Virus record (IMG/VR): IMGVR_UViG_3300035070_002626 | Coordinates: 124,001 to 188,000 of that record | Strand: one strand, 5' to 3' | Length of the DNA stretch: 64,000 nt | In this document: piece by piece, positions 9,681 to 22,872 of the stretch | Layout: every line of letters starts with the position of its first letter | Numbering within the stretch: the stretch's first letter is position 1 | Notes under the pieces: model-generated | The model's input: the letters and a program-made list of their open reading frames with translations, nothing else | Told to the model about the DNA's origin: nothing | Database searches by the model: none | Made by a program: the position numbers and the translations under genes

Positions 9681-11720
9681 TTACTTTGTCTGTGCTATGA
9701 AAACGCCATTCCAGTCTGAAGGAAGGTCTTGTGTTTTCATATACTCGCATCTTTCAATCCACATGTCGTAATATTTTTCCATTTGATGATCAAAGTGGTC
9801 ATGTAACAAGCGACATTTATCAATAGCATCATCGAATCTCTGCGCACGATAATCTTCGTGCATTTGTATGTGTTTCTTCTGCGCATTACGCCATGCCGGG
9901 GCAGTATTGTCGAGAACTGTGTAGATAGTTAATCCAACTGATTTACCTTTTACTTGTAAATCATCTACTTTAAGATAGAAGAAGTCATCCTTTGTTGCTG
10001 CGTATGTTGTTTCGCCTACAAGTAACAGGCATCCGTATTCTTTACACTTGCTTTCTACTCTTGCTGCGGTGCTCACAGCGTCTCCAAGGACATCATATGA
10101 ATGACGTTTAGTACTTCCCATCTCACCAAGGTATCCCAACCCCGTGTTGATGCCAGCGCCCATACCAACAGCAGGACGGCCATCAGGTATAATAACTTCT
10201 TCATTAAACTTCTCCACTGCACGAAGCATGTCTAAGCCACACTGTACGGCGGTCTTAGCATGTTTAGCGTCATCTATAGGCGCATTATGTATGTGCATAC
10301 TAGCATCGCCGATGTATTTAATTATCATTCCGTCCGCATCAAGCACAGGTTGTGTAATGCTGTCCATGTAGCCGTTCATAATAGTTGTCAGACCTTTTAC
10401 ATCATCACCAAAACTTTCACCCAATGGAGTAAAGCCACGCAAGTCACTAAACACAATAGAGACTTCTTTCTTTTGCCCGTCTTTAATTAGACTTGGATTT
10501 TCTTGTAGCAGTTTAACCACTGTAGGCGATGCGTATCCAGCAAACTGTTTCTTGATTGCTTGTTTCTCTAAAAACTCTTGTACAAACTTAATGCCATATA
10601 CTTGCAATGCTATTATAATAAACACTATAACAGGTGCTGTAACGTCTAAAAGAAACTTATCAGTTGCGTATGCGTATATGCTGTAAGGTATAACTCCGAC
10701 TATCATTGTAACAGTTGTAGCAAGCCCAACCCACATCCAACGACTTAATAATATAAGCAATAATCCGCCTACTACTAGTGCAACAAGCTCTGCTGTTGGT
10801 GCCCAATTGGGACGTTGTATGTTTGTACCAGCAAACATAGTGCCTAGTACTGCGGCTTGTGTAGTGCCTGCATACTGCGCTCCCAGTGCCGTGGGAACAG
10901 GGTTAGCAATGCCTGCGGCAGTAACGTCTACAATAACTACTGCACCTCCTAGATCATTAGGTAAGTCTGCAACACTTACATTCTTGCTACGTTGACTCCA
11001 ATCAATCCACACTCTACCCTCGCTGTCTGTAGGAATAACACCAAACTTTGGTATGCGCATTTTTTCTATACCAAACTGATTTAGTTTAATTTGAAAGTTG
11101 GGATCACCTGCAATGACTCGTAATGTCTCGAGCGCCAAGCTTGGATATAATGTGCCGTTTACAACAGCAACAGTTGGCATACGACGAACCACACCATCTA
11201 TCTCTGGTTCAGTGCTTACAATACCTGCACCCACTGAATTGTTTTCAAGTTCTGATATATTAGCAATAATACCACCATATGGCAAGATACGATCTAAGTA
11301 CTGAGGTTGGATAATTGCTGCGCCCGGATTAATTGGTTCGTTTACAGTTTTGTTACTAGGACGGCTAGCAAGTATAACCGGATAGTCTAACATAGTATCA
11401 GCTAGGTATGCATCTCCACCTAGTCTATCCTCTTCAGGCATCATTACATTCCACACAACCAATCCAGCACCTCTGTCGTACAAGTCTACAATAATGTCTG
11501 CGTATATGTCTCGGGGGAAAGGATACTGTCCGTACAGTTCTAGTGCTGCTTCGTCTATCTCTGCAACATAGATATTATTCTCTACTGCTGGTTGATTTAC
11601 AATAAGCTGATCAAAATAATTTAATTTAATACTTTGTATAAAGTTATTAGGTACTGCAAATGCATACACTAATGCAGCCAGTGTAATCAATGCCCACCAA
11701 GGAGATAATAATCGTTTCAT
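9681..11720 (-). CDS. CHASE2-domain class III adenylate cyclase
   Basis: N-terminal TM; CHASE2 (EIDE..L..YGQYPFPR, DGVVRR, PSLAL); 3 TMs; cyclase motifs FSDLRGFT, KYIGDA, GINTG, YDVLGDAVSTAARVES, VKGK. Confidence 0.95.
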   Translation of the reverse strand: MKRLLSPWWALITLAALVYAFAVPNNFIQSIKLNYFDQLIVNQPAVENNIYVAEIDEAALELYGQYPFPRDIYADIIVDLYDRGAGLVVWNVMMPEEDRLGGDAYLADTMLDYPVILASRPSNKTVNEPINPGAAIIQPQYLDRILPYGGIIANISELENNSVGAGIVSTEPEIDGVVRRMPTVAVVNGTLYPSLALETLRVIAGDPNFQIKLNQFGIEKMRIPKFGVIPTDSEGRVWIDWSQRSKNVSVADLPNDLGGAVVIVDVTAAGIANPVPTALGAQYAGTTQAAVLGTMFAGTNIQRPNWAPTAELVALVVGGLLLILLSRWMWVGLATTVTMIVGVIPYSIYAYATDKFLLDVTAPVIVFIIIALQVYGIKFVQEFLEKQAIKKQFAGYASPTVVKLLQENPSLIKDGQKKEVSIVFSDLRGFTPLGESFGDDVKGLTTIMNGYMDSITQPVLDADGMIIKYIGDASMHIHNAPIDDAKHAKTAVQCGLDMLRAVEKFNEEVIIPDGRPAVGMGAGINTGLGYLGEMGSTKRHSYDVLGDAVSTAARVESKCKEYGCLLLVGETTYAATKDDFFYLKVDDLQVKGKSVGLTIYTVLDNTAPAWRNAQKKHIQMHEDYRAQRFDDAIDKCRLLHDHFDHQMEKYYDMWIERCEYMKTQDLPSDWNGVFIAQTK

Positions 11721-12064
11721 GTTTTCTTTCCCATTAGTTTTGCTCGCATTGCATCTAGCTCTGCATTTCGCTGTTGTTCTTCTACGCTGGTTTGATTGGA
11801 CGAGATTTGTACTCTGGGTTTGGTACGCCTGGTTTGTACTGTACTACTGGATTGTACTTTATTTTTTGTTTGTTGTTGAACCCGCGATGGCGATGAATTT
11901 CCAATTTCTTGTCGAAGTTGTTCAATTCGGTATTTGATGTCTTGGGTTGCACTTCCGTCATACTTTTTACTTGCTGAATTTCTAAGTTGCTGATCAACTA
12001 ATTGGTTGATATTCTTACTAAAGTATTTATTTAGGACCCATTTAATCATAGTGGTATTTAACAC
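11717..12064 (-). CDS. Hypothetical basic protein within the curli/cyclase operon
   Basis: Stop overlaps the cyclase start (ATGA); Q/K-rich. Confidence 0.6.
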   Translation of the reverse strand: MLNTTMIKWVLNKYFSKNINQLVDQQLRNSASKKYDGSATQDIKYRIEQLRQEIGNSSPSRVQQQTKNKVQSSSTVQTRRTKPRVQISSNQTSVEEQQRNAELDAMRAKLMGKKT

Positions 12065-12086
12065 TATTGTGACCTAATAGTGTATT

Positions 12087-13268
12087 TTAGTATTGCGATA
12101 CACTCATGCTGCATCCGCCTGGATTAACACATGTACTTGTTATTGAGTATGACTTTGCTGTACCACTGTATTGTTCTAAACTAAAGTTGTATGCTGGTCC
12201 GTTCACACTAGATAAATTTACAGTTGCACTGTGTCCGCCACTGCCATGTTGTAGTATATCAACCAAGTTACTGTCGCCTGTTAAGTCAAGGTCAAGGCTT
12301 ACAGTGTCACTGTTTCCTAGTTGCGCTGCTTCAACATTGTTATAGTCTCCGTCTACGTCAACATTCATTGTATGAGCACCGTTTTTACGTTGTGACAATT
12401 CTACATCATTATAGTCACCTTCAATGCTTGTGGTCATTTCATGTGATGCCCAACAACAGTTCTCGGCTTGGTCAGTTTGTGCTGAATGGTATGTGTTATT
12501 GTTGCCGGTAATAGTTACATATGCGTCGTGGTCACCGGCTTCTGTTGTATCAGTATAACCATCTAATTGTTTACCTTGCCATACTTTTATATTGTTGTCA
12601 TCACCGATTAATATTAGTCTACTGAAGTTGCTTTCGCCGTTGCCACCTTGATAACTATCCACTGTGTTGTCATTGCCCGTGATTGCTGCTTCTGTTTGTT
12701 CGTATTGTGATCCATTTTGTGTTACTGTGACTGTATTCCTGTCGCCAGTGATGGGTGTATCATTGTAGCCATACACCATATGATTATTACCGTCTTGATC
12801 TACAGTTATAGAGTTGCCATCACCGTCTGCTTTGACGTATGCTAGGTTGTTATCACCGTCTTGTGTAATGGTTGCAGTTTGATCAGTATCACCACCATCT
12901 CCTAGTCCTGCGTAGGCTAAATTAGAGTCGCCAGTTTGTGTAATATCAATTCTGCAGTTGCTACCATAACAATGTGAATACGCTTCGTTATCATCGCCTG
13001 TTTGTGTTGTGTTGTTTATTCCATTATCTGCGCTCATGTACACACCTATTAGATTGATATCTCCTGTTTGAGTGTATGTAGTGCTTGCATTGTTGCCACT
13101 AATAGTCGCTTTGCCATTGGTAGGCCATCCATCACTAACAACATTGTCAGTGCCATCTTGTGTAATAGTTAAGTCAGTGTTGTTGCCAACTTGGTTGATA
13201 TAGATTTCATTTGCATAACAGATTTGGCTAAAAAAACAAGTTATTATTGTTGCAATTATTAATTTCAT
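12087..13268 (-). CDS. Long curlin-repeat protein (CsgA/CsgB-like)
   Basis: Signal peptide, then about 15 repeats of N-x-A/x-x-I-x-Q-x-G-x-x-N. Confidence 0.88.
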   Translation of the reverse strand: MKLIIATIITCFFSQICYANEIYINQVGNNTDLTITQDGTDNVVSDGWPTNGKATISGNNASTTYTQTGDINLIGVYMSADNGINNTTQTGDDNEAYSHCYGSNCRIDITQTGDSNLAYAGLGDGGDTDQTATITQDGDNNLAYVKADGDGNSITVDQDGNNHMVYGYNDTPITGDRNTVTVTQNGSQYEQTEAAITGNDNTVDSYQGGNGESNFSRLILIGDDNNIKVWQGKQLDGYTDTTEAGDHDAYVTITGNNNTYHSAQTDQAENCCWASHEMTTSIEGDYNDVELSQRKNGAHTMNVDVDGDYNNVEAAQLGNSDTVSLDLDLTGDSNLVDILQHGSGGHSATVNLSSVNGPAYNFSLEQYSGTAKSYSITSTCVNPGGCSMSVSQY

Positions 13269-14395
13269 TATTGCCTCTGATTTATATCTATAGTGTTGTT
13301 ACCAGCACCTAATAGGTAATCATATACCACTTCGTCACCTTGTTGAATATTAATACGATACCCATATTCTTGCGATAACGTCAATCTCAAATAATTATTT
13401 ACATCTACACTGGTTCTTTGTACAACCCAATCATCATTTCCTATTTGTAGCGAGATTCGTGTTGTTTCGTCGTATCCGCCGAGCTGTTGTTCAAAAAACT
13501 GCGAGTTTTGTGTTTTAAGTTCGTCTCTAAACAATGCTGCAAGAGCTAAATTTAATTGATCTATCATGTCGACTAGTAGTTCACCTAAGTAATAGTCCAC
13601 ATTATGATCTAAATCTGTTATCCAAATATCTTTAATGCTTTCTACTAACACATCTTCGTCGAGTTCATCAAACTCTAGTGCATCGATGTCAAGAAACTCA
13701 AACATTTTTCGTGTACGTTTGCGTATTTGATCTTCTTCATCTGCTATAACTGTTCGCTTGCGTAGTATTAACAAGTTGTTGATTTGGTCTTCGTTTACAC
13801 TAATAATTACCGGCTTGCTTGGAAGTTTTCCACTGTGTGAAACTTGTGTTGCTTGAAATGCTTGATTCATTACAACAAAACCTTCGTCTGTTTCTACTTT
13901 GATTTCGCCTGTTACACAATAACCTGCACTATCACAGCTAGGCAATAGAGTAACCATTGAGCCACCAATTTCATCTACAACCATAATAAAGTCTGTACCA
14001 CGCACAGAGATAGTTGCACTTGGTGTGCGCACTCTTACGTTTTGTCTTGAGTTTTTAGCAATTTGTCCACTGGCATAACGAACAGTTCCTAAGGCAGCTC
14101 GCATGTCCAAACTGCCTTTGCCTGTGTTAGGGTCGTATACAAAGTCGTCAATTACTAGTATACTATTGTCAATAACATCTACTCTGGTATCGTCAATAAA
14201 ATCTAAACGCATTTTACCACGTTTGGTTCTGGCAGTATCCATTGATTCCAGCAGAGTGCCTTTTTCGCTGCCGACTACATTGCTCTCACGCACAATTTCG
14301 CCAGACCCATCAAGTTCAGTCACTGTGCCAATACTAGCACTCGTTTGCGAGACTGTAACTAAGAGGCTGATAATTGCAAAAGCGAATATTTTCAT
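13268..14395 (-). CDS. FecR-domain periplasmic protein
   Basis: Signal peptide; IGTVTELDG, IDDFVYDP, VRTPSATISVRGTDF, GEIKV motifs. Confidence 0.9.
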   Translation of the reverse strand: MKIFAFAIISLLVTVSQTSASIGTVTELDGSGEIVRESNVVGSEKGTLLESMDTARTKRGKMRLDFIDDTRVDVIDNSILVIDDFVYDPNTGKGSLDMRAALGTVRYASGQIAKNSRQNVRVRTPSATISVRGTDFIMVVDEIGGSMVTLLPSCDSAGYCVTGEIKVETDEGFVVMNQAFQATQVSHSGKLPSKPVIISVNEDQINNLLILRKRTVIADEEDQIRKRTRKMFEFLDIDALEFDELDEDVLVESIKDIWITDLDHNVDYYLGELLVDMIDQLNLALAALFRDELKTQNSQFFEQQLGGYDETTRISLQIGNDDWVVQRTSVDVNNYLRLTLSQEYGYRINIQQGDEVVYDYLLGAGNNTIDINQRQ

Positions 14396-14396
14396 A

Positions 14397-15116
14397 TTAA
14401 TCGCTTTGCGTTATATCTACGTCTTGACTGTCGCCGTTAAATGTTGCATCAATTGTGCTACCGTCCACACCACTTTGTGTGATGTTGTACGTGCTGCCGC
14501 CTCCGGTGATGTTCAAATTAACAGTATGCCCATCCAAGCTTGCACCGCCGCTGGTATTGATAGTAATTGCATTGCCTTCGTCGCTAGCAGCACTTGTAGT
14601 TGCCAATGACGATGAATTATCTGCGACTATCGAAATTCTACTGTCAACCCCGTTTACTGTTAAGTTAGTAATATTGTTATCACCGTCCATATCAAAAGTA
14701 ATAATGCCGCCGCTTGCGTCTGCTGATTCACCAATATTAAATGTATATGTGTTATCGTCGCCGTCACCATCAATATCTAATTTTACAGTTTCACAGTTAC
14801 CTGCACCTGCTGTTCCTAAACTAGCACAATTTAGTGTTACATCATTCGAGTCTCCAAAAAAGTCCCAAGTACCTGTGTAATTTGCTCCGTTGATTATAGC
14901 ATCAATGGTGTTAGTGTTACCTGTTTGGGTAATACTAAACGTCATATCGTCGCCGTTGATTGTAAAATTGGTCGCCTGTTGGCCAATTTCGTTGTCAGTG
15001 CCATCTTGTACCAAGTCTAGATCTAAGTTATCCCCAACTTGGGTAATGTAAATATCATTTGCCAGTGAGGTACTGGATATAAACAACAAAGATAATACAT
15101 ATAAAAGTTTTTTCAT
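14397..15116 (-). CDS. Curlin-repeat protein (CsgB/CsgA-like)
   Basis: Signal peptide (SLA-N), NDIYITQVG, repeated I-x-Q-x-G-x-x-N strands. Confidence 0.85.
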   Translation of the reverse strand: MKKLLYVLSLLFISSTSLANDIYITQVGDNLDLDLVQDGTDNEIGQQATNFTINGDDMTFSITQTGNTNTIDAIINGANYTGTWDFFGDSNDVTLNCASLGTAGAGNCETVKLDIDGDGDDNTYTFNIGESADASGGIITFDMDGDNNITNLTVNGVDSRISIVADNSSSLATTSAASDEGNAITINTSGGASLDGHTVNLNITGGGSTYNITQSGVDGSTIDATFNGDSQDVDITQSD

Positions 15117-15151
15117 GTTCTGTTTGCTCCTAAGGCTTTACGCCTTTATTT

Positions 15152-15967
15152 TTATTTTTTAAATTTCCACATATTGCGCTTCTTACCCTCGAAAACCATT
15201 TCAATCACACCTTGCTCTATTGCTGCTCTTACTGCATAGTTAACTGGCTCATTAACACTATAACCAGTTTCGGCTTCTACAAGTTTTGTTCCTAAGTCGA
15301 AAAACTTAAAAATATCTGCACCCGATCTATAGCTTGCAATAGTCTTCTCAGTTGCTATGCTCATTAATACTTTACCAGTGCTAACGCTAACTAAACGCAT
15401 TACAACAGTTACAGTGTCTACTCTGTATTCTGTTTGCACACCGATACCTAAGTATCTTGCTCCTGCGCCTCCTACTGCTGTGTTGCTGTCATACCCAACA
15501 ATTCCCCCTTCAAGTATAAGCCCTGCAAACAACATTGGCTTCAACGGTGTAGGGCCGTTTGGAAGTTCTTTTTCGTACACTTCCCTCGTACTACGAATAA
15601 GTTGACGTTCTTTAATCAAATTATCCATACCTACACGCTCTACCACTTCAAACCAAACGCCATTACCTACATCTTGGAGTGCTTTAATAACCCATACTTC
15701 TGATCCTTGGGTTACTGCGCTCGACAAGTTGGCGATATTATCCGCCGGCTTACGCTGTCCTGTTGCATCTCTGAAACCGTAAACAGCGATTGTAATCTTT
15801 GGTCCATCTATTGCGGGGACCGCCGCAAGCCTATCTTCAATTGGACTAACTTGTACTATAGGAGATGTTTTACTATCTTCTAGAACTTGAAGGCTTTTGT
15901 TAGTTGCGCAGCCTTGTAATATTAGTACACTAAATCCAATTAGTAAAAACGTTTTTATCAGTTTCAT
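15152..15967 (-). CDS. csgG: Curli secretion channel CsgG
   Basis: Lipobox LQGC; AVYGFRDATGQRKP, SSAVTQG, WFEVVER, LIKERQLIR, EGGIVGYDSN, GARYLGIG, NEPVNYAVRAAIE. Confidence 0.96.
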   Translation of the reverse strand: MKLIKTFLLIGFSVLILQGCATNKSLQVLEDSKTSPIVQVSPIEDRLAAVPAIDGPKITIAVYGFRDATGQRKPADNIANLSSAVTQGSEVWVIKALQDVGNGVWFEVVERVGMDNLIKERQLIRSTREVYEKELPNGPTPLKPMLFAGLILEGGIVGYDSNTAVGGAGARYLGIGVQTEYRVDTVTVVMRLVSVSTGKVLMSIATEKTIASYRSGADIFKFFDLGTKLVEAETGYSVNEPVNYAVRAAIEQGVIEMVFEGKKRNMWKFKK

Positions 15968-16425
15968 TAGAAGTTAAACTCCCCGCCGCCGGGTATGCTA
16001 ATTTCTGTAGTTGTACCATCGTCGTCGACAATTGTTAACGTGATAGTTCCTGTTGTTGCGTCTTTAACCCAGGTTATATTTGCTCCTTCAATATCTGCTG
16101 TGCCTGTATTTGCACATGAGTCTCCGCAATTAGCAAACATAGCGTCTACCATTTGCTTACTTAGGTTAGCGTAGATTCTTGATTCCACGTTTCTAAGAAA
16201 CTTGTTTAGTGTTGTATTTTCAAGCTCGCGCTCTAAACGTGATGCCTCTGCCTCTGCCTTCTTTCGCAAGTCTTCACTGCGATTATGTTGTAACTGTTCT
16301 ACACTTAATACATGCGTAGAATATCCGTTTCCAAAATGAAACGCTGGAGATTTAAACCCCCAAACAAGATCAGCATTTGCTGACCCTGCAATTAACAGTA
16401 ATAAAACAGTGTATAAATTTTTCAT
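15967..16425 (-). CDS. csgF: Curli assembly protein CsgF
   Basis: Signal peptide, DLVWGFKSPAF..GNG N-terminus, C-terminal ITLTIVD..GTTTEISIP; directly upstream of csgG. Confidence 0.88.
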   Translation of the reverse strand: MKNLYTVLLLLIAGSANADLVWGFKSPAFHFGNGYSTHVLSVEQLQHNRSEDLRKKAEAEASRLERELENTTLNKFLRNVESRIYANLSKQMVDAMFANCGDSCANTGTADIEGANITWVKDATTGTITLTIVDDDGTTTEISIPGGGEFNF

Positions 16426-16442
16426 GGTCACCCTCTTATATG

Positions 16443-16450
16443 TATTTATA
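16443..16450 (-). promoter_or_regulatory. T4-type late promoter for the csg operon
   Basis: Exact TATAAATA just upstream of csgF. Confidence 0.6.
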
Positions 16451-16541: not shown

Positions 16542-16769
16542 ATGACCGAGCAAGACGTATTTTTTAACACATTTGATGAGATGTGGACCGAGAAGGAAAT
16601 ACAACATGTTTATGCAGAAAATCTCAACGAACAGTTGGAAACTCTTGAACTAAATTGTATTGAAACTGCACTGCAAGCACACAACGGTAATCGCACAAAA
16701 GCGGCCCAGTTGTTAAACATAGGCCGCACTTGTCTGCTTGCTAAAATGAAAAAATATAATCTAGTCTAA
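16542..16769 (+). CDS. Fis-family helix-turn-helix protein (stand-alone HTH_8)
   Basis: LETLELNCIETALQAHNGNRTKAAQLLNIGRTCLLAKMKKY. Confidence 0.9.
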   Translation: MTEQDVFFNTFDEMWTEKEIQHVYAENLNEQLETLELNCIETALQAHNGNRTKAAQLLNIGRTCLLAKMKKYNLV

Positions 16770-17288
16770 ATGTTTCATTAATTCGTCAATGTTAACTGGT
16801 GTATAGTCAGTATGTTCTACGCACACACACCTATATGGCCCTTCCGGGCTTGGATTACTATGAATATGCCCGTGTATATTAAGTATAGACTGTTTGCTAA
16901 ATCTACTCTTTTGGGCTATTGTATCAGGATGCTGCGAAGTGTGCGATAGTAACAACTTAGGAAAGTTTACTTCCCACATCATAATATGTTCAAAATACGG
17001 TAAAAGAGTTTTAGGGTTGTCTCGATTGCCAATGACTAGACGTTTCTTTCCAGGTAACTTAGCAAAGTTAGCAGCTAGCCATTCAGACTGATTTTCGCCG
17101 CACACTACATCTCCCAGGTGGTATACAATGTCGTCGACTTTGACAGTATCGGCCCAGTTGTCCAACATTGCTTCGTTCATCTGCTTTACTGAATCAAAAG
17201 ACCTTATCAACGAACCAGAGGCATCAAAAAATCCTAGAAGAGGTTCGTCGTTAAAATGTGTATCACTGATTACCCATGTATCGGACAT
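16761..17288 (-). CDS. Calcineurin-like metallophosphoesterase
   Basis: SDTHF, HLGD, GNRD (canonical GNHD), SH, HGHIH. Confidence 0.88.
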   Translation of the reverse strand: MSDTWVISDTHFNDEPLLGFFDASGSLIRSFDSVKQMNEAMLDNWADTVKVDDIVYHLGDVVCGENQSEWLAANFAKLPGKKRLVIGNRDNPKTLLPYFEHIMMWEVNFPKLLLSHTSQHPDTIAQKSRFSKQSILNIHGHIHSNPSPEGPYRCVCVEHTDYTPVNIDELMKHLD

Positions 17289-17307
17289 ATAGCTTACTTT
17301 TCTAATT

Positions 17308-17391
17308 TGGTACTCGCACCCGGACTCGAACCGGGACGCCCTACGGCCACAGATTTTAAGTCTGTTATGTCTACCATTCCATCATGCGAGC
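17308..17391 (-). tRNA. tRNA-Leu (TAA)
   Basis: GCTCGCA/TGCGAGT acceptor stem, ACAGA-CTTAAAA-TCTGT anticodon arm, long variable arm, GGTTCGAGTCC, encoded CCA. Confidence 0.95.
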
Positions 17392-17393
17392 GT

Positions 17394-17470
17394 TGGTGCT
17401 CCCGGTAGGACTCGAACCTACGACCGACCCGTTATGAGCGGGGCGCTCTAACCAACTGAGCTACAGGAGC
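17394..17470 (-). tRNA. tRNA with CAT anticodon, probably tRNA-Ile2 (lysidine) rather than Met
   Basis: GCTCCTG..TAGCTCAGTTGGTTAGAGC..CCCG-CTCATAA-CGGG..GGTTCGAGTCC..ACCA; lacks the initiator C1:A72 mismatch and GGG:CCC anticodon stem. Confidence 0.9.
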
Positions 17471-17481
17471 GGTAATGTTTT

Positions 17482-17616
17482 TTATCGATAATCTTTGATG
17501 TTGTAGGCGTCTTTATATGCACGATCCATATCTTTGCCTCCATGATTATAACCAACAATATAACCGATAATAACACCGCAGATTGCAATGCACAATGAGA
17601 TCATAATAACTTCCAT
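17482..17616 (-). CDS. Small membrane protein (44 aa)
   Basis: Manual translation MEVIMISLCIAICGVIIGYIVGYNHGG...; GGAGG RBS. Confidence 0.65.
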   Translation of the reverse strand: MEVIMISLCIAICGVIIGYIVGYNHGGKDMDRAYKDAYNIKDYR

Positions 17617-17619
17617 GGC

Positions 17620-17886
17620 TTAAGCCTCCATTCCGTCAAACATTTCGTATTCACGTTCACTTGCTGCTTCTTCGCTGCGTTGAGCAATCATGTTTCCTAC
17701 GATTTCGTCAAACGCTTCGTAAAACAATTCTTCGCTTGCAAAATCGCCACGGCATGCAGTGTACGCATCAGCATCAACAAAGTTCCAATTGATGCTGTAA
17801 TCTTCATTGAGATTTTCGGCACGATCTGCTACAGCTTCGACTACATTACGGAGTGTGATATAATTTTGCATGTTGTACACTTTCAT
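17620..17886 (-). CDS. Acidic hypothetical early protein
   Basis: ORF directly behind a sigma70 promoter. Confidence 0.75.
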   Translation of the reverse strand: MKVYNMQNYITLRNVVEAVADRAENLNEDYSINWNFVDADAYTACRGDFASEELFYEAFDEIVGNMIAQRSEEAASEREYEMFDGMEA

Positions 17887-17905
17887 TGTTGCTTTCTATA
17901 CATAC

Positions 17906-17934
17906 TTTATAGCATATACAAATATAATTGTCAA
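17906..17934 (-). promoter_or_regulatory. Sigma70-type promoter driving the small ORFs and tRNAs
   Basis: TTGACA-N17-TATAAA. Confidence 0.7.
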
Positions 17935-17957
17935 CCGGAATATGTGTTTTATTCAAT

Positions 17958-18089
17958 TTATTTTTTTGTAAGTTCTACAAATCTATCTGCAATTTCACGC
18001 ATTTGTTTTGCATTCAAGTTTGCTGTACCCATCGATTCTACAGTACGAGCAATATCGTGTAATTTAATTGCAATTTCGCTGTCCGTCAT
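17958..18089 (-). CDS. Small hypothetical protein (43 aa)
   Basis: Manual translation MTDSEIAIKLHDIARTVESMG...LTKK; abuts the upstream gene. Confidence 0.6.
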   Translation of the reverse strand: MTDSEIAIKLHDIARTVESMGTANLNAKQMREIADRFVELTKK

Positions 18090-18090
18090 G

Positions 18091-18372
18091 CTACTTTTTC
18101 TTTTCTAATTTTTTAATACGTGTTTCTAGTTCGTCTATCTTTTTAGTTACATGTGGATACTTTTTACGCCATGCATCTTCGGGTTGTTGCAACCAAGTCC
18201 ATCCCCAACGGTGCACCAAATAATTTAATGTACGATTAAACCAACTGTATGCCCATAATCCAAGACGAGTGCCTTGGAAGTATGCTAAAAATGCAGCTCC
18301 AAATAAACTCCCTGCAAGTGCAGTGTAAATCCATAGCCTGTCGCTGGCCATTCTTTCTAACATTTCCCACAT
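18091..18372 (-). CDS. Hypothetical membrane protein
   Basis: TM segment plus C-terminal coiled coil. Confidence 0.7.
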   Translation of the reverse strand: MWEMLERMASDRLWIYTALAGSLFGAAFLAYFQGTRLGLWAYSWFNRTLNYLVHRWGWTWLQQPEDAWRKKYPHVTKKIDELETRIKKLEKKK

Positions 18373-18381
18373 TATAATTTC

Positions 18382-18729
18382 CTACTTGTAAACCACAGGG
18401 TCCCAGTCAGATACATCTGTGTCTTTGTATTTAACAATTCTGTCTAACATTACATCATAAAAACTATCCAACTGTTTGCCCCATTTACCTTTAAGGTGCT
18501 CGAGTGCTTGTTCACAAAAATTAAAGTCAGGCTTTTTGTAATTTTCAACTAGTTTGGTGTGTAAATTTGTCACACGTTCTAATTCTGCAATCTCAGTAAC
18601 CGGAATGTCTTCTATTACGCAATATGCAGTTACAACTGGTGAATCGCCTATTTTCATATCGTCAAGTGGTAAAATTGTATATTTGCTTTTCATATTGGTT
18701 GCAATTTCGTCGCCGAAAATAATGTGCAT
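18382..18729 (-). CDS. Stand-alone homolog of the adenylate cyclase C-terminal region (non-catalytic)
   Basis: AAGGAGA RBS before ATG 18729; aligns by eye with the last ~115 aa of the cyclase at 9681-11720. Confidence 0.7.
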   Translation of the reverse strand: MHIIFGDEIATNMKSKYTILPLDDMKIGDSPVVTAYCVIEDIPVTEIAELERVTNLHTKLVENYKKPDFNFCEQALEHLKGKWGKQLDSFYDVMLDRIVKYKDTDVSDWDPVVYK

Positions 18730-18758
18730 TGGTGTCTCCTTGTGTAAGTAATTATGCA

Positions 18759-19553
18759 ATGAAAATACACTTTGATTTAATTTCTGATCTTCACGTAGAT
18801 ACGTGGGAAGAACCGTTTAGTTGGGAAGGCAAAGCTACTAGCTTGTATGCTGTAGTTGCCGGTGATATTAGTAGAGAGCGCAGTGACATTAGACCTGTGC
18901 TCAAAGAGCTATCATCTCATTATAAACTTGTCATATTCGTCGACGGCAATGATGAACATAGATGGGAGTTAGAAAACCTAGGACAAAGTTACGAATCTCT
19001 ACGCCATGAAGTTGCTGGCATTGGTAATGTTGTTTGGTTGCAAGATAATTCTGTAGTAGTCGATGGTGTTGCATTTGTAGGCGTTAATGGCTGGACAGGT
19101 TTTGATTTTGATTGCGACCTTTCTTATCAAGACAGTAAACGCTGGTTAGAAGAAAGATACGGTGTTAGTATGTATGCTGGGCAACAAATCGAAGCACTAT
19201 CATTAAGTGATGCTGGATTCTTATGCAAAACAGTTAGTAAACTACAGACACACCACGATGTTAGAAAAATAGTATTAATTACACATTATGTACCCAATGT
19301 GCGGTTAATCGAACACGATGTTGAGCTAGAAGGTACTCATGCATTAAACTGCACTGGTAATAGCATGTTATCTCGTTGCCTTGACGAAGACCATGAAAAT
19401 AAAGTTCATACATGGTGTTTTGGACATTATCACAGTGATGTTGATACAACCATTGATAACATAAGATATGTAAATAATTGCAGAGGAAGCAATGGCACCA
19501 ATTGGTGCAAAGCCGTGTACTATCCCAAACGCATCGAAATTGATATCAGTTAG
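18759..19553 (+). CDS. Calcineurin-like metallophosphoesterase
   Basis: SDLH, AGD, GNDE, TH, FGHYH motifs. Confidence 0.88.
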   Translation: MKIHFDLISDLHVDTWEEPFSWEGKATSLYAVVAGDISRERSDIRPVLKELSSHYKLVIFVDGNDEHRWELENLGQSYESLRHEVAGIGNVVWLQDNSVVVDGVAFVGVNGWTGFDFDCDLSYQDSKRWLEERYGVSMYAGQQIEALSLSDAGFLCKTVSKLQTHHDVRKIVLITHYVPNVRLIEHDVELEGTHALNCTGNSMLSRCLDEDHENKVHTWCFGHYHSDVDTTIDNIRYVNNCRGSNGTNWCKAVYYPKRIEIDIS

Positions 19554-19554
19554 A

Positions 19555-19860
19555 TTAACTTTCGGGCTCGATTTTAACTTGCAACGGATATCCATTAGCA
19601 CGGGCAAGTAGAGTAACTTCAATTCCTTTTTGTTCAGCCATTTCGTACGGCATAACTGCTACCACAGCTGATCCCGTTTCGTGCACGTTGAGTGTTAAAT
19701 TTTCCGCAGTTGCTTCGGTATAATTGAAAATATCAACTAGTGTGTGGATAACAAACTCATGTGAAGTTTGGTTGTCGTTAATGTAGATCAACTTAAACAA
19801 CGTTGGTTCTTTAAGAAAAATGTTTGTTTGCACTTTATTTTTTGTTTCGGTTTGGCTCAT
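19555..19860 (-). CDS. clpS: ATP-dependent Clp protease adaptor ClpS
   Basis: EP..FKLIYIND..T..EFV..L..IF, VHETGSAVV, AEQK, GYPLQVKIE. Confidence 0.92.
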   Translation of the reverse strand: MSQTETKNKVQTNIFLKEPTLFKLIYINDNQTSHEFVIHTLVDIFNYTEATAENLTLNVHETGSAVVAVMPYEMAEQKGIEVTLLARANGYPLQVKIEPES

Positions 19861-19937
19861 AACAATCCTTATTCTTTTATAGTGTATGCAGAGCAATAGC
19901 CACTCTGCATACTATTTTTATATACTTATCTTAGGAG

Positions 19938-20381
19938 TTAGGTTTCAACTGTTATGTCGATAACTTTTGGCTTCATTACTTCTGGAATAAGTCGCTCAAG
20001 GTCAATCTTGAGAATTCCATCTTTCAATGTTGCTGCTTTAACTTCTACGTAGTCTGCTAAGTTGAATGTGCGTACAAAAGGTCTAGTACTAATGCCCTTG
20101 TGCAGGAATTCACACTCATCGTCAGAATCTGTTTTTCCTGTAACTGTTAGTACCCCTTCTTTCAGCTCAACATTGATGTCCGCCATTTGAAAACCAGCTA
20201 CTGCCAGTCTGATGCGATAAGTTTCTTCTCCTGTGCGAAGAATATCATATGGGGGATAATTTTGCACAGCACCATTGGCTGTTGCTCTGTCAATGTTGTT
20301 AGTGATACGATCAAAAAGTTGATCAAATCCAACTGCGTTGCGATAAAATGGGGTGAGGTCTAGTGAGGTAAGTCTTGTCAT
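19938..20381 (-). CDS. Small heat shock protein Hsp20 (IbpA-like)
   Basis: VGFDQLFD, NYPPYDI, LAVAGF, FLHKGIS.R.F.R.F.L, GILKIDL, PE..KP..I. Confidence 0.95.
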   Translation of the reverse strand: MTRLTSLDLTPFYRNAVGFDQLFDRITNNIDRATANGAVQNYPPYDILRTGEETYRIRLAVAGFQMADINVELKEGVLTVTGKTDSDDECEFLHKGISTRPFVRTFNLADYVEVKAATLKDGILKIDLERLIPEVMKPKVIDITVET

Positions 20382-20442
20382 TTTGTTTCTCCTTTATAAA
20401 AGCAAGATTTAAAATTGTAGGTCCTGTTTAGCAACCTACAAT
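20382..20442 (-). ncRNA. ROSE-like RNA thermometer in the hsp20 5'UTR
   Basis: AUCUUGCU-UUUAUA-AAGGAGA hairpin occludes the SD; preceded by an AUUGUAGGU/ACCUACAAU hairpin. Confidence 0.7.
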
Positions 20443-20444
20443 AT

Positions 20445-20475
20445 TATTTATACACGATACAACCAACAATGTCAA
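20445..20475 (-). promoter_or_regulatory. Composite early/late promoter of hsp20
   Basis: TTGACA-N17-TATAAA in which the -10 box is also TATAAATA. Confidence 0.7.
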
Positions 20476-20484
20476 TATATCAAT

Positions 20485-22872
20485 TTACCATTTAATGCTA
20501 TATGATACTTCGGCTACGTTATTGCCTGTTTGGCTCATTGCTGCACCTAGTGTTATGTCGCCATTGTTGTATGCAGTAGTGTATTCAATTCTAGCATATG
20601 CATTTATATCTGATGGCATACCAAATTGTTGCTGTGTGTACTGTGTTGTTCCGTTGCTGTCAATACTAGTAGGAATACTTGTGCTAACGTTACCGCTGAG
20701 TGCAACTGGGTGTATACCTGCAAACGCTTGTAACCCACCGTCAGTATAGCTTGCTTCGGCCCACACTCCTGTTTGTGTCGAAACATTTGTAACCAATCCA
20801 GGTGTGATGTCTGTGCTCACATGCATTACGCTACCTGTGAATGCAAACTTGTCTTTAGCATAACTTGCAACGTTGTCGATAACTGTGCTACTCTTAACAT
20901 CGCCCCAAACCCCATTAAAATCTAACCAAGGATTGTTTTTCATATTTGTTGCATAGACACTGTAATCAAAGTTACCTACACTATACATACTATGCCCAAG
21001 TGATATTTCATTGGAATCAAGATTGAATCTAATTGTTGTATCGCTGTTTCCAAACGATACACTGCCATTATTTTGTAATGTGTTGTACATTGTGGTATTA
21101 CTGTTTACTGTAGATTGACTTAGATCAACTGTATAGCCTCGACCAATGGTGTCAGTTGCTACGCCGGATACTTCGCCAATGTTTAGTCCAGTGATGTTGC
21201 CACTTAGTGACGATCCGTTTAGTGACAATCCTCCCAATGGATTAAATGCCGATTTGATGTCGATGATATTGCCGCCTGCATATGTTGTGCCACTGGCTAT
21301 TAGTGCTTGTGTTGCATCGGCATCACTTAAATAATTCCACTCATCTTGCAACATGCTTTTAGCTGTGCCTGCTGCAATGGTTGATCCATCTATTTGGCTC
21401 ATAAACACAGCCATTTGTCTATCTGATCCGTTCATAAATGGTATGTATGTTACAAGATAATCATTACCATCGTCGCCTTTAAACACATTAACTGTGTTAC
21501 CACTACTGTTAGCACTACCACCATATGTATTTGTTGAATCAGTGATAAAATTTGTTAATGTGTTCTGATGTGCAGCAACATATTTGTTGTCTGATGTTTT
21601 AATCAAGAACTGATGGCTGTCATTAGCTCCACCAAAGTCTCCGCCAGACACTAGAATATCTTCTTTTCCGTCGCCATTAATATCGAAAAATTTGGGCTGG
21701 TATGTACTGTGACTGTTAGTGTTATATCCACTTAGAATGCTACTCGTAACATCGCTAAAGTCCCCAGTGCCGTTGTTTTGTAAAAACTGTATGTCACTAA
21801 ATTCTCGGAACACATCTGATGAACGAGCAAACACCATAACATCGTCGATGTTATCTTCGTTGAAATCGTAGTTAACTACACGCACCTGGTGATCAGTTCC
21901 AGTTACATTTGAACTTGCTGGCAAGTCTTTAACAAATGTGTATTCTACAACAGCTTCACCCTCTCGCGCATCCCAACCTTGCGGATTAGTAAAATCTACA
22001 CTGTACATCTTGGTTAAATTAGCACTGCTACATCCAGCTACGTTAAGATACGACAATGGGCAAGAAGCATCAGTTATAATGATTTCGTTGTTGCCGCCAT
22101 CTCCTAAGAAATTACCAATAGTTACACCTGAACCACCACTGCGAAGATGTCCGCTGTTATTCCATGGATCTATATATGTAGTAAACCCATCAATTGTATT
22201 GTTAAGAGCAATTGTTGTGTTTGGTCCATAATCTGTCATGATAATATCATCGTATGTGTCGTTGTTCAAGTCGCCGACATCACTATCATGTGACCATATA
22301 CCTACAGTGGGAATTGAAATTTTGGCAAAATTACTACCGTCATTACGAAATACATTTGCTGGACCATACACAACATTGTTATCGGTGCTGTGGCTTACAA
22401 ACATGTCATTTCGGCCTGTCTTAAAAAAGTCTGTAAACTCAATATCAGGCTCAGTGCCTAAGATTATATTATCATCACCGGAAAACCATTGAGATGTTTT
22501 ATCAACCAAACTGCCGTTTTCAAAACTCATTATGTTTATTCGACTGCTCACCCAATTGTTATAATCATTTGTTGCTGTCTGTCTACCAGCAAACACAATA
22601 TCGTCACTAGCTCCGTCTCCATCCAAATCGCTGATGTAGGAGTCGTATACAGAATATACACTAGTAGCACCGCCTGCTAGTGGATCAATGGTTCCTTGGT
22701 ATGTTGGAAGAGCATACAACCAAGCAATTGGACTAGGCGAAGGACTGCCCGGATTACTAGGAGTTGCCCCTGCTTGTGTTGCAGGCTGTCCGCCTCCACC
22801 TCCACCACCACATGCACTAAGAGCAGTGGTTGCTAGCAGGGCTGCTACAAGTTTAGGTCTTGCGTGTTGCAT
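20485..22872 (-). CDS. Lipoprotein with FG-GAP/VCBS repeats and a probable C-terminal beta-barrel (autotransporter-like)
   Basis: Lipobox LSAC followed by poly-G; DLDGDG..DIV, GDLNND..DII, DFNED..DVM, DINGDG.EDILV repeats; ends VSYSIKW. Confidence 0.75.
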   Translation of the reverse strand: MQHARPKLVAALLATTALSACGGGGGGGQPATQAGATPSNPGSPSPSPIAWLYALPTYQGTIDPLAGGATSVYSVYDSYISDLDGDGASDDIVFAGRQTATNDYNNWVSSRINIMSFENGSLVDKTSQWFSGDDNIILGTEPDIEFTDFFKTGRNDMFVSHSTDNNVVYGPANVFRNDGSNFAKISIPTVGIWSHDSDVGDLNNDTYDDIIMTDYGPNTTIALNNTIDGFTTYIDPWNNSGHLRSGGSGVTIGNFLGDGGNNEIIITDASCPLSYLNVAGCSSANLTKMYSVDFTNPQGWDAREGEAVVEYTFVKDLPASSNVTGTDHQVRVVNYDFNEDNIDDVMVFARSSDVFREFSDIQFLQNNGTGDFSDVTSSILSGYNTNSHSTYQPKFFDINGDGKEDILVSGGDFGGANDSHQFLIKTSDNKYVAAHQNTLTNFITDSTNTYGGSANSSGNTVNVFKGDDGNDYLVTYIPFMNGSDRQMAVFMSQIDGSTIAAGTAKSMLQDEWNYLSDADATQALIASGTTYAGGNIIDIKSAFNPLGGLSLNGSSLSGNITGLNIGEVSGVATDTIGRGYTVDLSQSTVNSNTTMYNTLQNNGSVSFGNSDTTIRFNLDSNEISLGHSMYSVGNFDYSVYATNMKNNPWLDFNGVWGDVKSSTVIDNVASYAKDKFAFTGSVMHVSTDITPGLVTNVSTQTGVWAEASYTDGGLQAFAGIHPVALSGNVSTSIPTSIDSNGTTQYTQQQFGMPSDINAYARIEYTTAYNNGDITLGAAMSQTGNNVAEVSYSIKW

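What the first reader, a model, noticed from the sequence alone, without database searches (positions are those of the whole stretch)
18382..19553. Stand-alone non-catalytic copy of the cyclase C-terminus, head-to-head with a metallophosphoesterase
Seen: the 115-aa ORF aligns by eye along its length with the cyclase C-terminus: IIFGDEIATNMKSKYTILPLDDMKI vs LLVGETTYAATKDDFFYLKVDDLQV; TAYCVIE vs TIYTVLD; H..L.ENYKKPDF vs H..M.EDYRAQRF; QLDSFYDVMLDRI vs QMEKYYDMWIERC; SDWDPV vs SDWNGV. It lacks all metal-binding and substrate residues and lies ~30 nt from a divergent calcineurin-like phosphoesterase. Established: class III cyclases work as dimers, and CpdA-type cAMP phosphodiesterases are calcineurin-like. 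Inference: this is an off-switch module (a decoy/inhibitor of phage or host cyclases plus a cNMP phosphodiesterase), possibly also acting against cyclic-nucleotide immunity.
Basis: partly seen in the sequence, partly recalled or inferred. Interest (0 to 1): 0.82.

Follow-up and report, generated by a model that had tools for sequence, protein, structure and literature searches.

The report
Stand-alone cyclase-tail protein in phage
A large marine phage carries a small, well-conserved gene that is a non-enzymatic copy of the last ~115 residues of its own class III nucleotide cyclase. The copy is real and widespread, but nothing beyond adjacency supports the idea that it forms a cyclic-nucleotide "off-switch" with the neighbouring phosphoesterase.

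Summary
The 115-aa ORF (18385-18729, minus) is homologous along its whole length to residues 564-679 of the window's CHASE2 cyclase. Evidence: BLASTP E 6e-6; profile-profile probability 96.8%, E 3e-10; the family HMM hits 79 of 81 phage cyclase C-termini; Foldseek TM 0.70. It folds confidently on its own (pLDDT 94) as the last strand-helix-hairpin of the catalytic domain plus a helical tail. It lacks every catalytic residue. It belongs to a large, apparently phage-only family (611 clusters).

The neighbour 29 nt away is a metallophosphoesterase with all metal ligands intact. Its closest solved relative is PptH (TM 0.67-0.72), not the cAMP phosphodiesterase Rv0805 (0.40-0.42).

The three genes are separable:
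- The small gene always follows Hsp20-ClpS.
- The esterase was lost at least three times while the small gene stayed.
- A cyclase lies within 10 kb in only 14 of 48 loci.
- Melnitz-like phages have the cyclase but no copy.

Most likely the protein is a cyclase-derived binding module that mimics the cyclase C-terminal unit. The mechanism is inferred. The "decoy plus cNMP phosphodiesterase" reading is only partly supported.

The parts
18382..18729 (-). Small gene: 115 aa from the ATG at 18729, stop at 18382-18384. It is a stand-alone non-catalytic homologue of cyclase residues 564-679. Predicted fold: strand 2-5, helix 7-13, hairpin 18-26/33-39, then helices 44-47, 50-65, 69-79 and 88-101.
18730..18758 (.). 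29-nt divergent spacer. It carries the small gene's ribosome-binding site (AAGGAGA, 18735-18741, minus strand). It also holds a conserved A/T-rich block next to the esterase start that loosely resembles a T4-type late promoter on the esterase strand. In relatives the spacer is 24-29 nt in 63 of 72 loci and its sequence is conserved.
   Evidence: the promoter reading is inference only
18759..19553 (+). Metallophosphoesterase, 264 aa. It is the only plus-strand gene in a long minus-strand run. Metal-ligand motifs are invariant in the family: D10-x-H12, G35-D36, G63-N64-D-E66-H67, H176 and G222-H223-Y224-H225. Its stop lies 1 nt from the ClpS stop (convergent).
19555..19860 (-). ClpS adaptor homologue. 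It is the invariable upstream neighbour of the small gene (80 of 80 loci). In loci without the esterase the small gene's start overlaps or abuts the ClpS stop.
19938..20381 (-). Hsp20 homologue, first gene of the conserved Hsp20-ClpS-(esterase)-small block. An exact TATAAATA lies 64 nt upstream, at 20445-20452 (minus).
9681..11720 (-). CHASE2-class III cyclase, 679 aa, last gene of a CsgF-CsgG-curlin-FecR-curlin cassette shared with Methylophilales phage Melnitz.
9684..10031 (-). Cyclase residues 564-679, the unit copied in the small gene: the last strand-helix-hairpin of the catalytic domain plus an ~80-aa helical tail. It is the best-conserved part of the cyclase (81-98% identity in the top 120 relatives; 70% to Melnitz against 52.8% overall).

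Best explanation
Shown: the small gene encodes a real phage protein family that descends from the 3' end of a tail-bearing class III cyclase gene. It keeps one structural unit: the final strand, helix and beta-hairpin of the catalytic domain, packed against a three-helix, TPR-like tail. It has lost everything needed for catalysis.

Inferred: it acts as a protein-binding module that mimics the C-terminal unit of such cyclases, those of the phage cassette or similar ones of the host. By occupying whatever that unit normally contacts (another tail, the rest of the catalytic domain, or a partner protein), it would modulate cyclic-nucleotide signalling in the infected cell.

Its function does not depend on the neighbouring metallophosphoesterase. 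That enzyme is an active-looking phosphodiesterase of unknown substrate, wedged in antisense between ClpS and the small gene. The descriptive part I hold at about 0.9. The competitor mechanism I hold at about 0.3.
For: Homology to the cyclase C-terminus is established by five routes.

The protein folds alone with high confidence (pLDDT 94.2, pTM 0.86).

Ten positions are near-invariant in both families: G6/569, L20/583, D23/586, Y36/600, H57/617, Y64/624, L79/639, Y91/651, R97/657 and W109/670. They span hairpin and tail, so the two were inherited as one packed unit.

The family is large and under purifying selection: 611 cluster representatives at E<=1e-3, the top 150 all 79-144 aa, with 12 invariant columns.

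It appears phage-restricted: Atlas clusters are 88-100% viral, and the genome scan of 185,579 species, which used only two peptide patterns, found no relative.

The same unit, by predicted structure, ends many bacterial class III cyclases of CHASE2, dCache, GAF and HAMP architectures (TM 0.74-0.80 over 109-115 residues). Host targets are therefore plausible.

The cyclase's own copy of the unit is its most conserved part, as expected for a contact surface.

The tail has TPR-like neighbours in the Atlas (a lead only).

Independence from the esterase rests on at least four changes of esterase presence on the ClpS+Hsp20 tree. Three of the esterase-less lineages are nested inside esterase-bearing clades.
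Against: - No binding or activity has been tested.
- Co-occurrence with the phage cyclase is weak (14 of 48 loci). If a cyclase is the target, it must usually be a host one or lie elsewhere in the genome.
- Identity to the cyclase unit is only 22-24%. The small family has its own invariant residues (M1, I3, I4, T18, C72), which may mean a new function unrelated to cyclases.
- Pfam finds no TPR in it.
- The invariable position after Hsp20-ClpS, and the esterase never being seen without it (79 of 79), fit other partnerships equally well.
Confidence: 0.35

Rival explanations
1. The small protein is a decoy or inhibitor of cyclases, the esterase is a cNMP phosphodiesterase, and together they switch off cyclic-nucleotide signalling or counter cyclic-nucleotide immunity.
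For: - The pair is adjacent and divergent in 72 of 80 small-gene loci and 79 of 79 esterase loci, with a conserved 24-29-nt spacer.
- The esterase active site is intact.
- MPPED2 and Rv0805, which act on cyclic nucleotides, are among its structural matches.
- One distant phage homologue is annotated as a cAMP phosphodiesterase.
Against: - All these loci belong to one phage lineage with conserved gene order, so adjacency is essentially one evolutionary event.
- The esterase was lost at least three times without loss of the small gene.
- L085 has a lysozyme-like gene in the esterase's place.
- Best structural match is PptH, not Rv0805.
- No CpdA family hit and no PADLOC hit.
- Cyclase, small gene and esterase occur in several other combinations: small+esterase without a nearby cyclase, small+cyclase without esterase, and cyclase alone.
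Confidence: 0.12
2. Enzyme-regulator pair. The small protein binds and controls (inhibits, activates or targets) the metallophosphoesterase, and its cyclase ancestry is only historical.
For: - The esterase subfamily was never found without the small gene (79 of 79 assessable loci), whereas the reverse occurs. This is the asymmetry expected if the enzyme needs its partner.
- The head-to-head spacer is fixed and its sequence conserved.
Against: - The 79 loci are the closest 80 of 295 relatives and are phylogenetically non-independent.
- Distant esterase homologues in Salmonella, Vibrio, Klebsiella and Sinorhizobium jumbo phages have no detectable small-gene homologue anywhere in the phage collection.
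- The small gene persists in four esterase-less lineages, so it has another role.
Confidence: 0.15
3. Member of the Hsp20-ClpS proteostasis operon. The small protein works with the phage ClpS, Hsp20 or ClpX, for example as a substrate selector or anti-adaptor.
For: - ClpS is the upstream neighbour in 80 of 80 loci and Hsp20 in 79 of 80.
- Where the esterase is absent, the small gene's ATG overlaps or lies within 12 nt of the ClpS stop, on the same strand, which suggests co-translation.
Against: - Synteny within one lineage is weak evidence.
- Melnitz-like phages have Hsp20-ClpS without the small gene.
- Nothing in the fold resembles known Clp adaptors.
Confidence: 0.12
4. Decaying remnant of a cyclase gene truncated by insertion, with no function.
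For: It corresponds exactly to a 3' gene fragment, and the locus is an insertion hot spot.
Against: - 611 clusters with 12 invariant columns.
- Its own start codon and ribosome-binding site.
- A confident autonomous fold.
- Kept intact across relatives only 40-50% identical.
Confidence: 0.01

Closest known systems
C-terminal unit of phage and bacterial CHASE2-type class III cyclases (window cyclase residues 564-679; Melnitz gp104, QZI94833.1)
   Same: Homologous over the full 115 residues. Same predicted fold, and ten shared near-invariant residues linking hairpin and tail.
   Different: Stand-alone, with no CHASE2, membrane or catalytic core. Only 22-24% identical. The VKGK lysines are lost. 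It has its own invariant residues (M1, I3, I4, T18, C72).
Class III cyclase catalytic domain (Pfam PF00211)
   Same: Its first ~40 residues match the last strand, helix and hairpin of the domain (37 columns, rmsd 2.3 A, to 5oyh).
   Different: Covers roughly the last fifth of the domain. No Pfam hit and no metal, substrate or transition-state residues. It is not a member.
Naturally truncated, dominant-negative cyclase isoforms (my knowledge, not tested here)
   Same: A non-catalytic piece of a dimeric cyclase that could interfere with the full-length enzyme.
   Different: Those isoforms keep the dimer interface. This fragment lacks the core elements that make the head-to-tail dimer, and it is a separate, anciently diverged gene.
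PptH (Rv2795c) phosphopantetheinyl hydrolase, PDB 6unc
   Same: Best structural match of the esterase (TM 0.67-0.72, E 8e-10). It is also the only metallophosphoesterase found by the profile search of PDB sequences (E 0.079).
   Different: 18% identity. The substrate of the phage enzyme is unknown.
Class III cNMP phosphodiesterases (CpdA/Icc, Rv0805) and MPPED2
   Same: Same superfamily and binuclear metal site.
   Different: Rv0805 reaches only TM 0.40-0.42. No CpdA family hit. Motif III is GNDEH instead of GNHD/E.
Phage metallophosphoesterase Gp48 of mycobacteriophage A10ZJ24 (PMC12287305)
   Same: A phage-encoded metallophosphoesterase with a role in infection.
   Different: Gp48 is reported to damage host DNA. 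This shows that phage enzymes of this fold need not act on cyclic nucleotides. No sequence comparison was made here.

Membership tests
Class III nucleotidyl cyclase catalytic domain (PF00211) | Match to the whole ~180-residue domain model | tested here: not met
   No Pfam hit for the small protein or for any of 29 homologues. Homology starts at cyclase residue 564, while the domain spans 416-595.
Class III nucleotidyl cyclase catalytic domain (PF00211) | Two metal-binding Asp, substrate-specifying residues, transition-state Asn/Arg | tested here: not met
   The corresponding cyclase residues (D426, K468, D472, S550/R554) all lie N-terminal of the copied part.
Cyclase C-terminal unit (hairpin plus helical tail) of tail-bearing CHASE2 cyclases | Full-length sequence and fold homology to cyclase residues 564-679 | tested here: met
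   hhalign probability 96.8%, E 3e-10. The HMM hits 79 of 81 cyclases. Foldseek TM 0.70 over 114 columns.
TPR / Sel1-like repeats | Match to a TPR family model | tested here: not met
   No TPR family among the Pfam hits up to E 5. Only Atlas feature and structure neighbours (0.91; TM 0.59-0.67) suggest it, which is a lead, not a test.
Calcineurin-like metallophosphoesterase superfamily | Five metal-ligand motifs and the fold | tested here: met
   DxH, GD, GN, H and GHxH are invariant in 31 sequences. phrog_1649 E 1.9e-29. Foldseek probability 1.0 to many such structures. Pfam Metallophos_2 only E 0.0028, below its cut-off.
Class III cNMP phosphodiesterase (CpdA/Icc/Rv0805) | Family-level sequence match and GNH[D/E] motif | tested here: not met
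   No CpdA model among the NCBIfam hits up to E 0.1; the best is TIGR03729, below its cut-off. Motif III is GNDEH. Rv0805 TM 0.40-0.42 against PptH 0.67-0.72.
Class III cNMP phosphodiesterase (CpdA/Icc/Rv0805) | Hydrolysis of 3',5'-cAMP/cGMP | not testable with these tools
   Needs an enzyme assay.
Two-gene functional module (small protein + esterase) | Association that recurs independently of shared ancestry | tested here: inconclusive
   Adjacent in 72 of 80 and 79 of 79 loci, but all in one lineage. The esterase was lost at least three times, a different gene sits at that position in L085, and the two genes are divergently transcribed.
Known anti-CBASS / anti-Pycsar enzymes (Acb1, Apyc1) | Sequence or fold membership | not tested
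   No library of anti-defence proteins was at hand. From my knowledge those enzymes have other folds. PADLOC (defence systems) gave no hit.

The most novel reading that the evidence does not exclude
Phages of this lineage have turned the C-terminal unit of a class III cyclase into a trans-acting capping protein. It binds tail-bearing cyclases of the host (or of the phage's own curli-cyclase cassette) and silences them. The adjacent PptH-like phosphodiesterase removes the product. Together they would be a dedicated viral shut-off of cyclic-nucleotide signalling, built from a fragment of the enzyme it targets.
Probability: 0.12. Interest if true: 0.75.

Novelty: new variant of a known kind. Interest (0 to 1): 0.45.

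Why it matters
It shows that a piece cut across a domain boundary can become an autonomous, strongly conserved protein. The piece is the last quarter of a cyclase catalytic domain plus its tail, and the resulting family is common in abundant marine phages.

It also marks the C-terminal helical tail of many class III cyclases as a discrete, unstudied unit. No solved structure contains it, and it is the most conserved part of the phage enzyme.

If the stand-alone copy does bind cyclases, it would be a simple natural tool for probing or blocking bacterial cAMP/cGMP signalling, and a new kind of phage host-takeover factor. If it does not, it is a clean example of exaptation.

Either way, the finding corrects an attractive but under-supported "off-switch module" reading.

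Tried and rejected
- **Sequence libraries for the small protein.** Pfam, PHROGs, NCBIfam, PADLOC and PDB sequence searches gave nothing meaningful.
- **Fold search for the small protein.** Foldseek against PDB gave no whole-domain match.
- **Cultured phages.** tblastn of the small protein against 50,697 phage records found no match. megablast of the region also found none.
- **PDB searches for the esterase.** Sequence and profile searches returned only a marginal hit to 6unc.
- **Promoter and terminator scan of 17200-20600.** Fewer promoter-like sites than in shuffles and no terminators. TATAAATA is not enriched in the window.
- **Bacterial genomes.** The first scan could not be run with A1. 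With A4 it found no relative.
- **Genome-wide cyclase check.** I looked for a cyclase elsewhere in the long small-gene contigs using a degenerate DNA motif.
- **Metatranscriptomes.** Contigs of four RNA libraries cover the whole 4.6-kb stretch evenly and carry no strand information. Transcription is not shown.
- **Literature.** The Melnitz and pelagimyophage papers do not mention the cyclase, ClpS or the esterase. No paper on phage CHASE2 cyclases was found.
- **Pseudogene reading.** Rejected on conservation.

Full report
**What is there**

The finding's coordinates hold two genes.
- On the minus strand, an ORF runs from 18759 to 18382. An alignment of 29 homologues shows that translation starts at the ATG at 18729, giving 115 residues beginning MHIIFG. 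An AAGGAGA ribosome-binding site lies 5 nt upstream.
- On the plus strand, 29 nt away and divergent, a 264-residue ORF starts at 18759 and stops at 19553. Its stop is 1 nt from the stop of the convergent ClpS gene.
It has a CHASE2 domain (14-322) and a class III catalytic domain (416-595).

**Is the resemblance real?**

Yes, by five routes.
- A profile of the small family against the cyclase gives probability 95.4%, E 1.8e-8.
- The same profile against an alignment of cyclase tails gives probability 96.8%, E 3e-10.
- An HMM of the small family, run over every ORF of 81 cyclase loci fetched from IMG/VR and from phage Melnitz, hits the C-terminus of 79 cyclases over its whole length. E-values run from 9e-14 to 4e-5, median 3e-9. 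The two misses are a variant cyclase that has no tail.
- The AlphaFold model (pLDDT 94.2, pTM 0.86) superimposes on the last 114 residues of a 671-residue phage CHASE2 cyclase at TM 0.70.

All catalytic residues of the cyclase lie N-terminal of residue 564, and the two lysines of the VKGK hairpin turn are not kept. "Non-catalytic copy of the C-terminus" is therefore correct.

**What the copied unit is**

The model has a strand (2-5), a helix (7-13), a hairpin (18-26, 33-39) and then helices at 44-47, 50-65, 69-79 and 88-101.
- The first ~40 residues are the end of the cyclase catalytic domain. The only relevant PDB match is 37 columns at 2.3 A to that part of a rhodopsin-guanylyl cyclase core, 5oyh.
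- No solved structure contains the helical tail.
- Ten positions are near-invariant in both families and spread over hairpin and tail: G6/569, L20/583, D23/586, Y36/600, H57/617, Y64/624, L79/639, Y91/651, R97/657 and W109/670. I read this as a packing network that holds the two parts together (inference).
- In the cyclase this unit is the best-conserved part. The top 120 of 3319 relatives are 81-98% identical over residues 560-679. Melnitz is 70% identical over the last 140 residues against 52.8% overall.
- The ESM Atlas structure search aligns 109-115 residues at TM 0.74-0.80 with the C-termini of bacterial class III cyclases of CHASE2/Sel1, dCache, GAF and HAMP architectures.
- The tail alone has TPR-like neighbours in the Atlas. 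Pfam finds no TPR, so that remains a lead.

**How widespread**

- The small family has 611 cluster representatives at E<=1e-3 among 1.84 billion. The best 150 are all 79-144 residues, that is, stand-alone.
- Atlas clusters are 88-100% viral.
- A pattern scan of 185,579 bacterial and archaeal species genomes found no relative.
- No cultured phage in the collection has it.
- It sits on IMG/VR contigs of up to 346-353 kb, so the carrier is probably a jumbo phage.
- The window is identical over these genes to a 299,910-bp contig.
- The stretch is found in marine, seawater and estuary metagenomes from many studies.
- The nearest cultured relatives of the cyclase cassette are Methylophilales phage Melnitz and Pelagibacter phage HTVC008M. 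Melnitz carries the same CsgF-CsgG-curlin-FecR-curlin-cyclase order as the window.

**The phosphoesterase**

- Its family (1606 proteins, about 263 residues) keeps every metal ligand of the calcineurin-like fold: D10-x-H12, G35-D36, G63-N64, H176 and G222-H223-Y224-H225. Motif III reads GNDEH rather than GNH[D/E].
- It matches phrog_1649 (E 1.9e-29). It matches Pfam Metallophos_2 and NCBIfam TIGR03729 only weakly, both below cut-off. No CpdA model is hit.
- Its model (pLDDT 93.1) is closest to PptH of M. tuberculosis (TM 0.67-0.72, E 8e-10). MPPED2 follows at 0.56 and Dbr1 at about 0.5. The cAMP phosphodiesterase Rv0805 reaches 0.40-0.42.
- It looks active, but nothing singles out cyclic nucleotides as substrate.
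- A published phage enzyme of this fold acts on host DNA (PMC12287305), so function within the fold is open.

**Are the genes a module?**

Three censuses and a tree.
- *Anchored on the small gene (80 loci).* ClpS is the upstream neighbour in 80, Hsp20 in 79, and the esterase is divergent and adjacent in 72. A cyclase lies within 10 kb in 14 of the 48 loci that have at least 9 kb of downstream sequence, always with CsgG.
- *Anchored on the cyclase (80 loci).* A stand-alone small gene is nearby in only two: the window's own contig and L143, which has no esterase. Melnitz-like contigs have Hsp20-ClpS and the cyclase but no copy.
- *Anchored on the esterase (the closest 80 of 295).* The small gene is adjacent in 79 of 79 assessable loci.
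- *Spacer.* It is 24-29 nt in 63 of 72 loci and its sequence is conserved. Part of this is the small gene's ribosome-binding site. The rest is an A/T-rich block next to the esterase start.
- *ClpS+Hsp20 tree rooted on the phages without the small gene.* Small-gene carriers form one side of a branch (support 90). Esterase-less lineages need at least four changes, and three of them are nested inside esterase-bearing clades. That is most simply at least three losses.
- *Esterase-less loci.* The small gene's start overlaps or lies within 12 nt of the ClpS stop on the same strand.
- *L085, the most basal carrier.* A lysozyme-like gene, not the esterase, lies head-to-head with the small gene.
- *L077-L079.* A NUMOD3 homing-endonuclease-like gene is inserted between the pair.

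The slot between ClpS and the small gene therefore accepts antisense insertions. The esterase is an old but dispensable occupant, and the small gene is the constant. Because all these loci belong to one lineage with conserved gene order, adjacency counts as roughly one event, not many.

**Best reading**

The small protein is a cyclase-derived, non-catalytic binding domain.
- The most economical mechanism is mimicry of the C-terminal unit of tail-bearing cyclases, competing for whatever that unit contacts.
- Such units end many bacterial cyclases, and most carriers show no cyclase within the 10 kb examined. The usual target, if it is a cyclase, would therefore be a host enzyme.
- This step is inference. 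I put it at about 0.3 and the descriptive part at about 0.9.
- The fragment lacks the parts of the catalytic domain that form the head-to-tail dimer (my knowledge of the fold). Decoy action through ordinary catalytic-domain dimerisation therefore seems unlikely.

**Expression**

Contigs from four metatranscriptomic libraries cover the whole 4.6-kb stretch at even depth, from strains 90-99% identical. Contigs carry no strand, and DNA carry-over cannot be excluded, so transcription is not shown.

**Verdict**

- The protein family is uncharacterised, and the copied unit has no solved structure.
- I rate it a new variant of a known kind, of moderate interest.

Noticed in passing
window 17308-17470 (minus): Two adjacent tRNA genes, tRNA-Leu(taa) and tRNA-Met(cat), lie between the small-gene block and the curli-cyclase cassette. 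In the RNA libraries this stretch has 20-40 times the depth of its surroundings, probably from related tRNAs of other organisms.
   Followed up: partly
window 16761-17288 (minus): A second, unrelated metallophosphoesterase of 175 aa (Pfam Metallophos E 5e-7; phrog_547 E 7e-39) lies 1.1 kb from the small gene. It is present near the small gene in only 2 of 80 relatives.
   Followed up: partly
window 9681-16431 (minus): The cassette is CsgF, CsgG, a 239-aa protein with no Pfam hit, a FecR-domain protein, a curlin-repeat protein, a 115-aa ORF and the CHASE2 cyclase. It is syntenic with phage Melnitz. In the jumbo lineage it is a variable insert downstream of the small gene, sometimes inverted (L034, L041, L062).
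   Followed up: partly
window cyclase residues 546-556 (about 10053-10085, minus): The usual GDxVNxAxR motif reads GDAVSTAAR. The transition-state Asn is Ser, and this is invariant in all eight aligned phage cyclases. The enzyme may have unusual catalytic properties.
   Followed up: no
L148 10001-11827; L149 7423-9282: A 619-aa variant cyclase has a similar CHASE2 part (61% identity) but a divergent catalytic domain and no C-terminal tail. HTVC008M likewise matches only to residue 600.
   Followed up: partly
L077 9321-9938 (also L078, L079; a ~620-nt insert in L037, L038): A 205-aa NUMOD3-motif protein of homing-endonuclease type is inserted between the esterase and the small gene. The small gene there seems to start at a GTG.
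   Followed up: partly
L085 8208-10027: In the most basal small-gene carrier, the slot between ClpS and the small gene holds a 264-aa protein and an antisense 326-aa lysozyme-like protein instead of the esterase (function judged from the sequence by eye, not tested).
   Followed up: no
window 19543-19565: One metatranscriptome contig (X15) carries 2,033 extra letters exactly at the esterase/ClpS convergent junction, so this junction is another insertion point in a related strain.
   Followed up: no
window 16443-16450 and 20445-20452 (minus): Exact TATAAATA, the T4 late-promoter consensus (my knowledge), lies 12 nt upstream of the CsgF start and 64 nt upstream of the Hsp20 start. The motif is not enriched in the window overall: 5 found, 5.9 expected.
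   Followed up: partly
window 16542-16769 (plus): A 75-aa Fis-type helix-turn-helix protein (HTH_8, E 9e-14) is encoded on the opposite strand, between the second phosphoesterase and CsgF.
   Followed up: no
window 20485-22872 (minus): A 795-aa protein with a lipoprotein-like N-terminus and FG-GAP repeats (E 6e-11) lies between ClpX and Hsp20. Its length varies among relatives, judging by the ClpX-Hsp20 spacing.
   Followed up: no
L037 6904-7098; L038 4021-4215: Only a 65-residue match to the cyclase N-terminus (45% identity) lies about 0.9 kb downstream of the small gene. It may be a remnant or a divergent gene.
   Followed up: no
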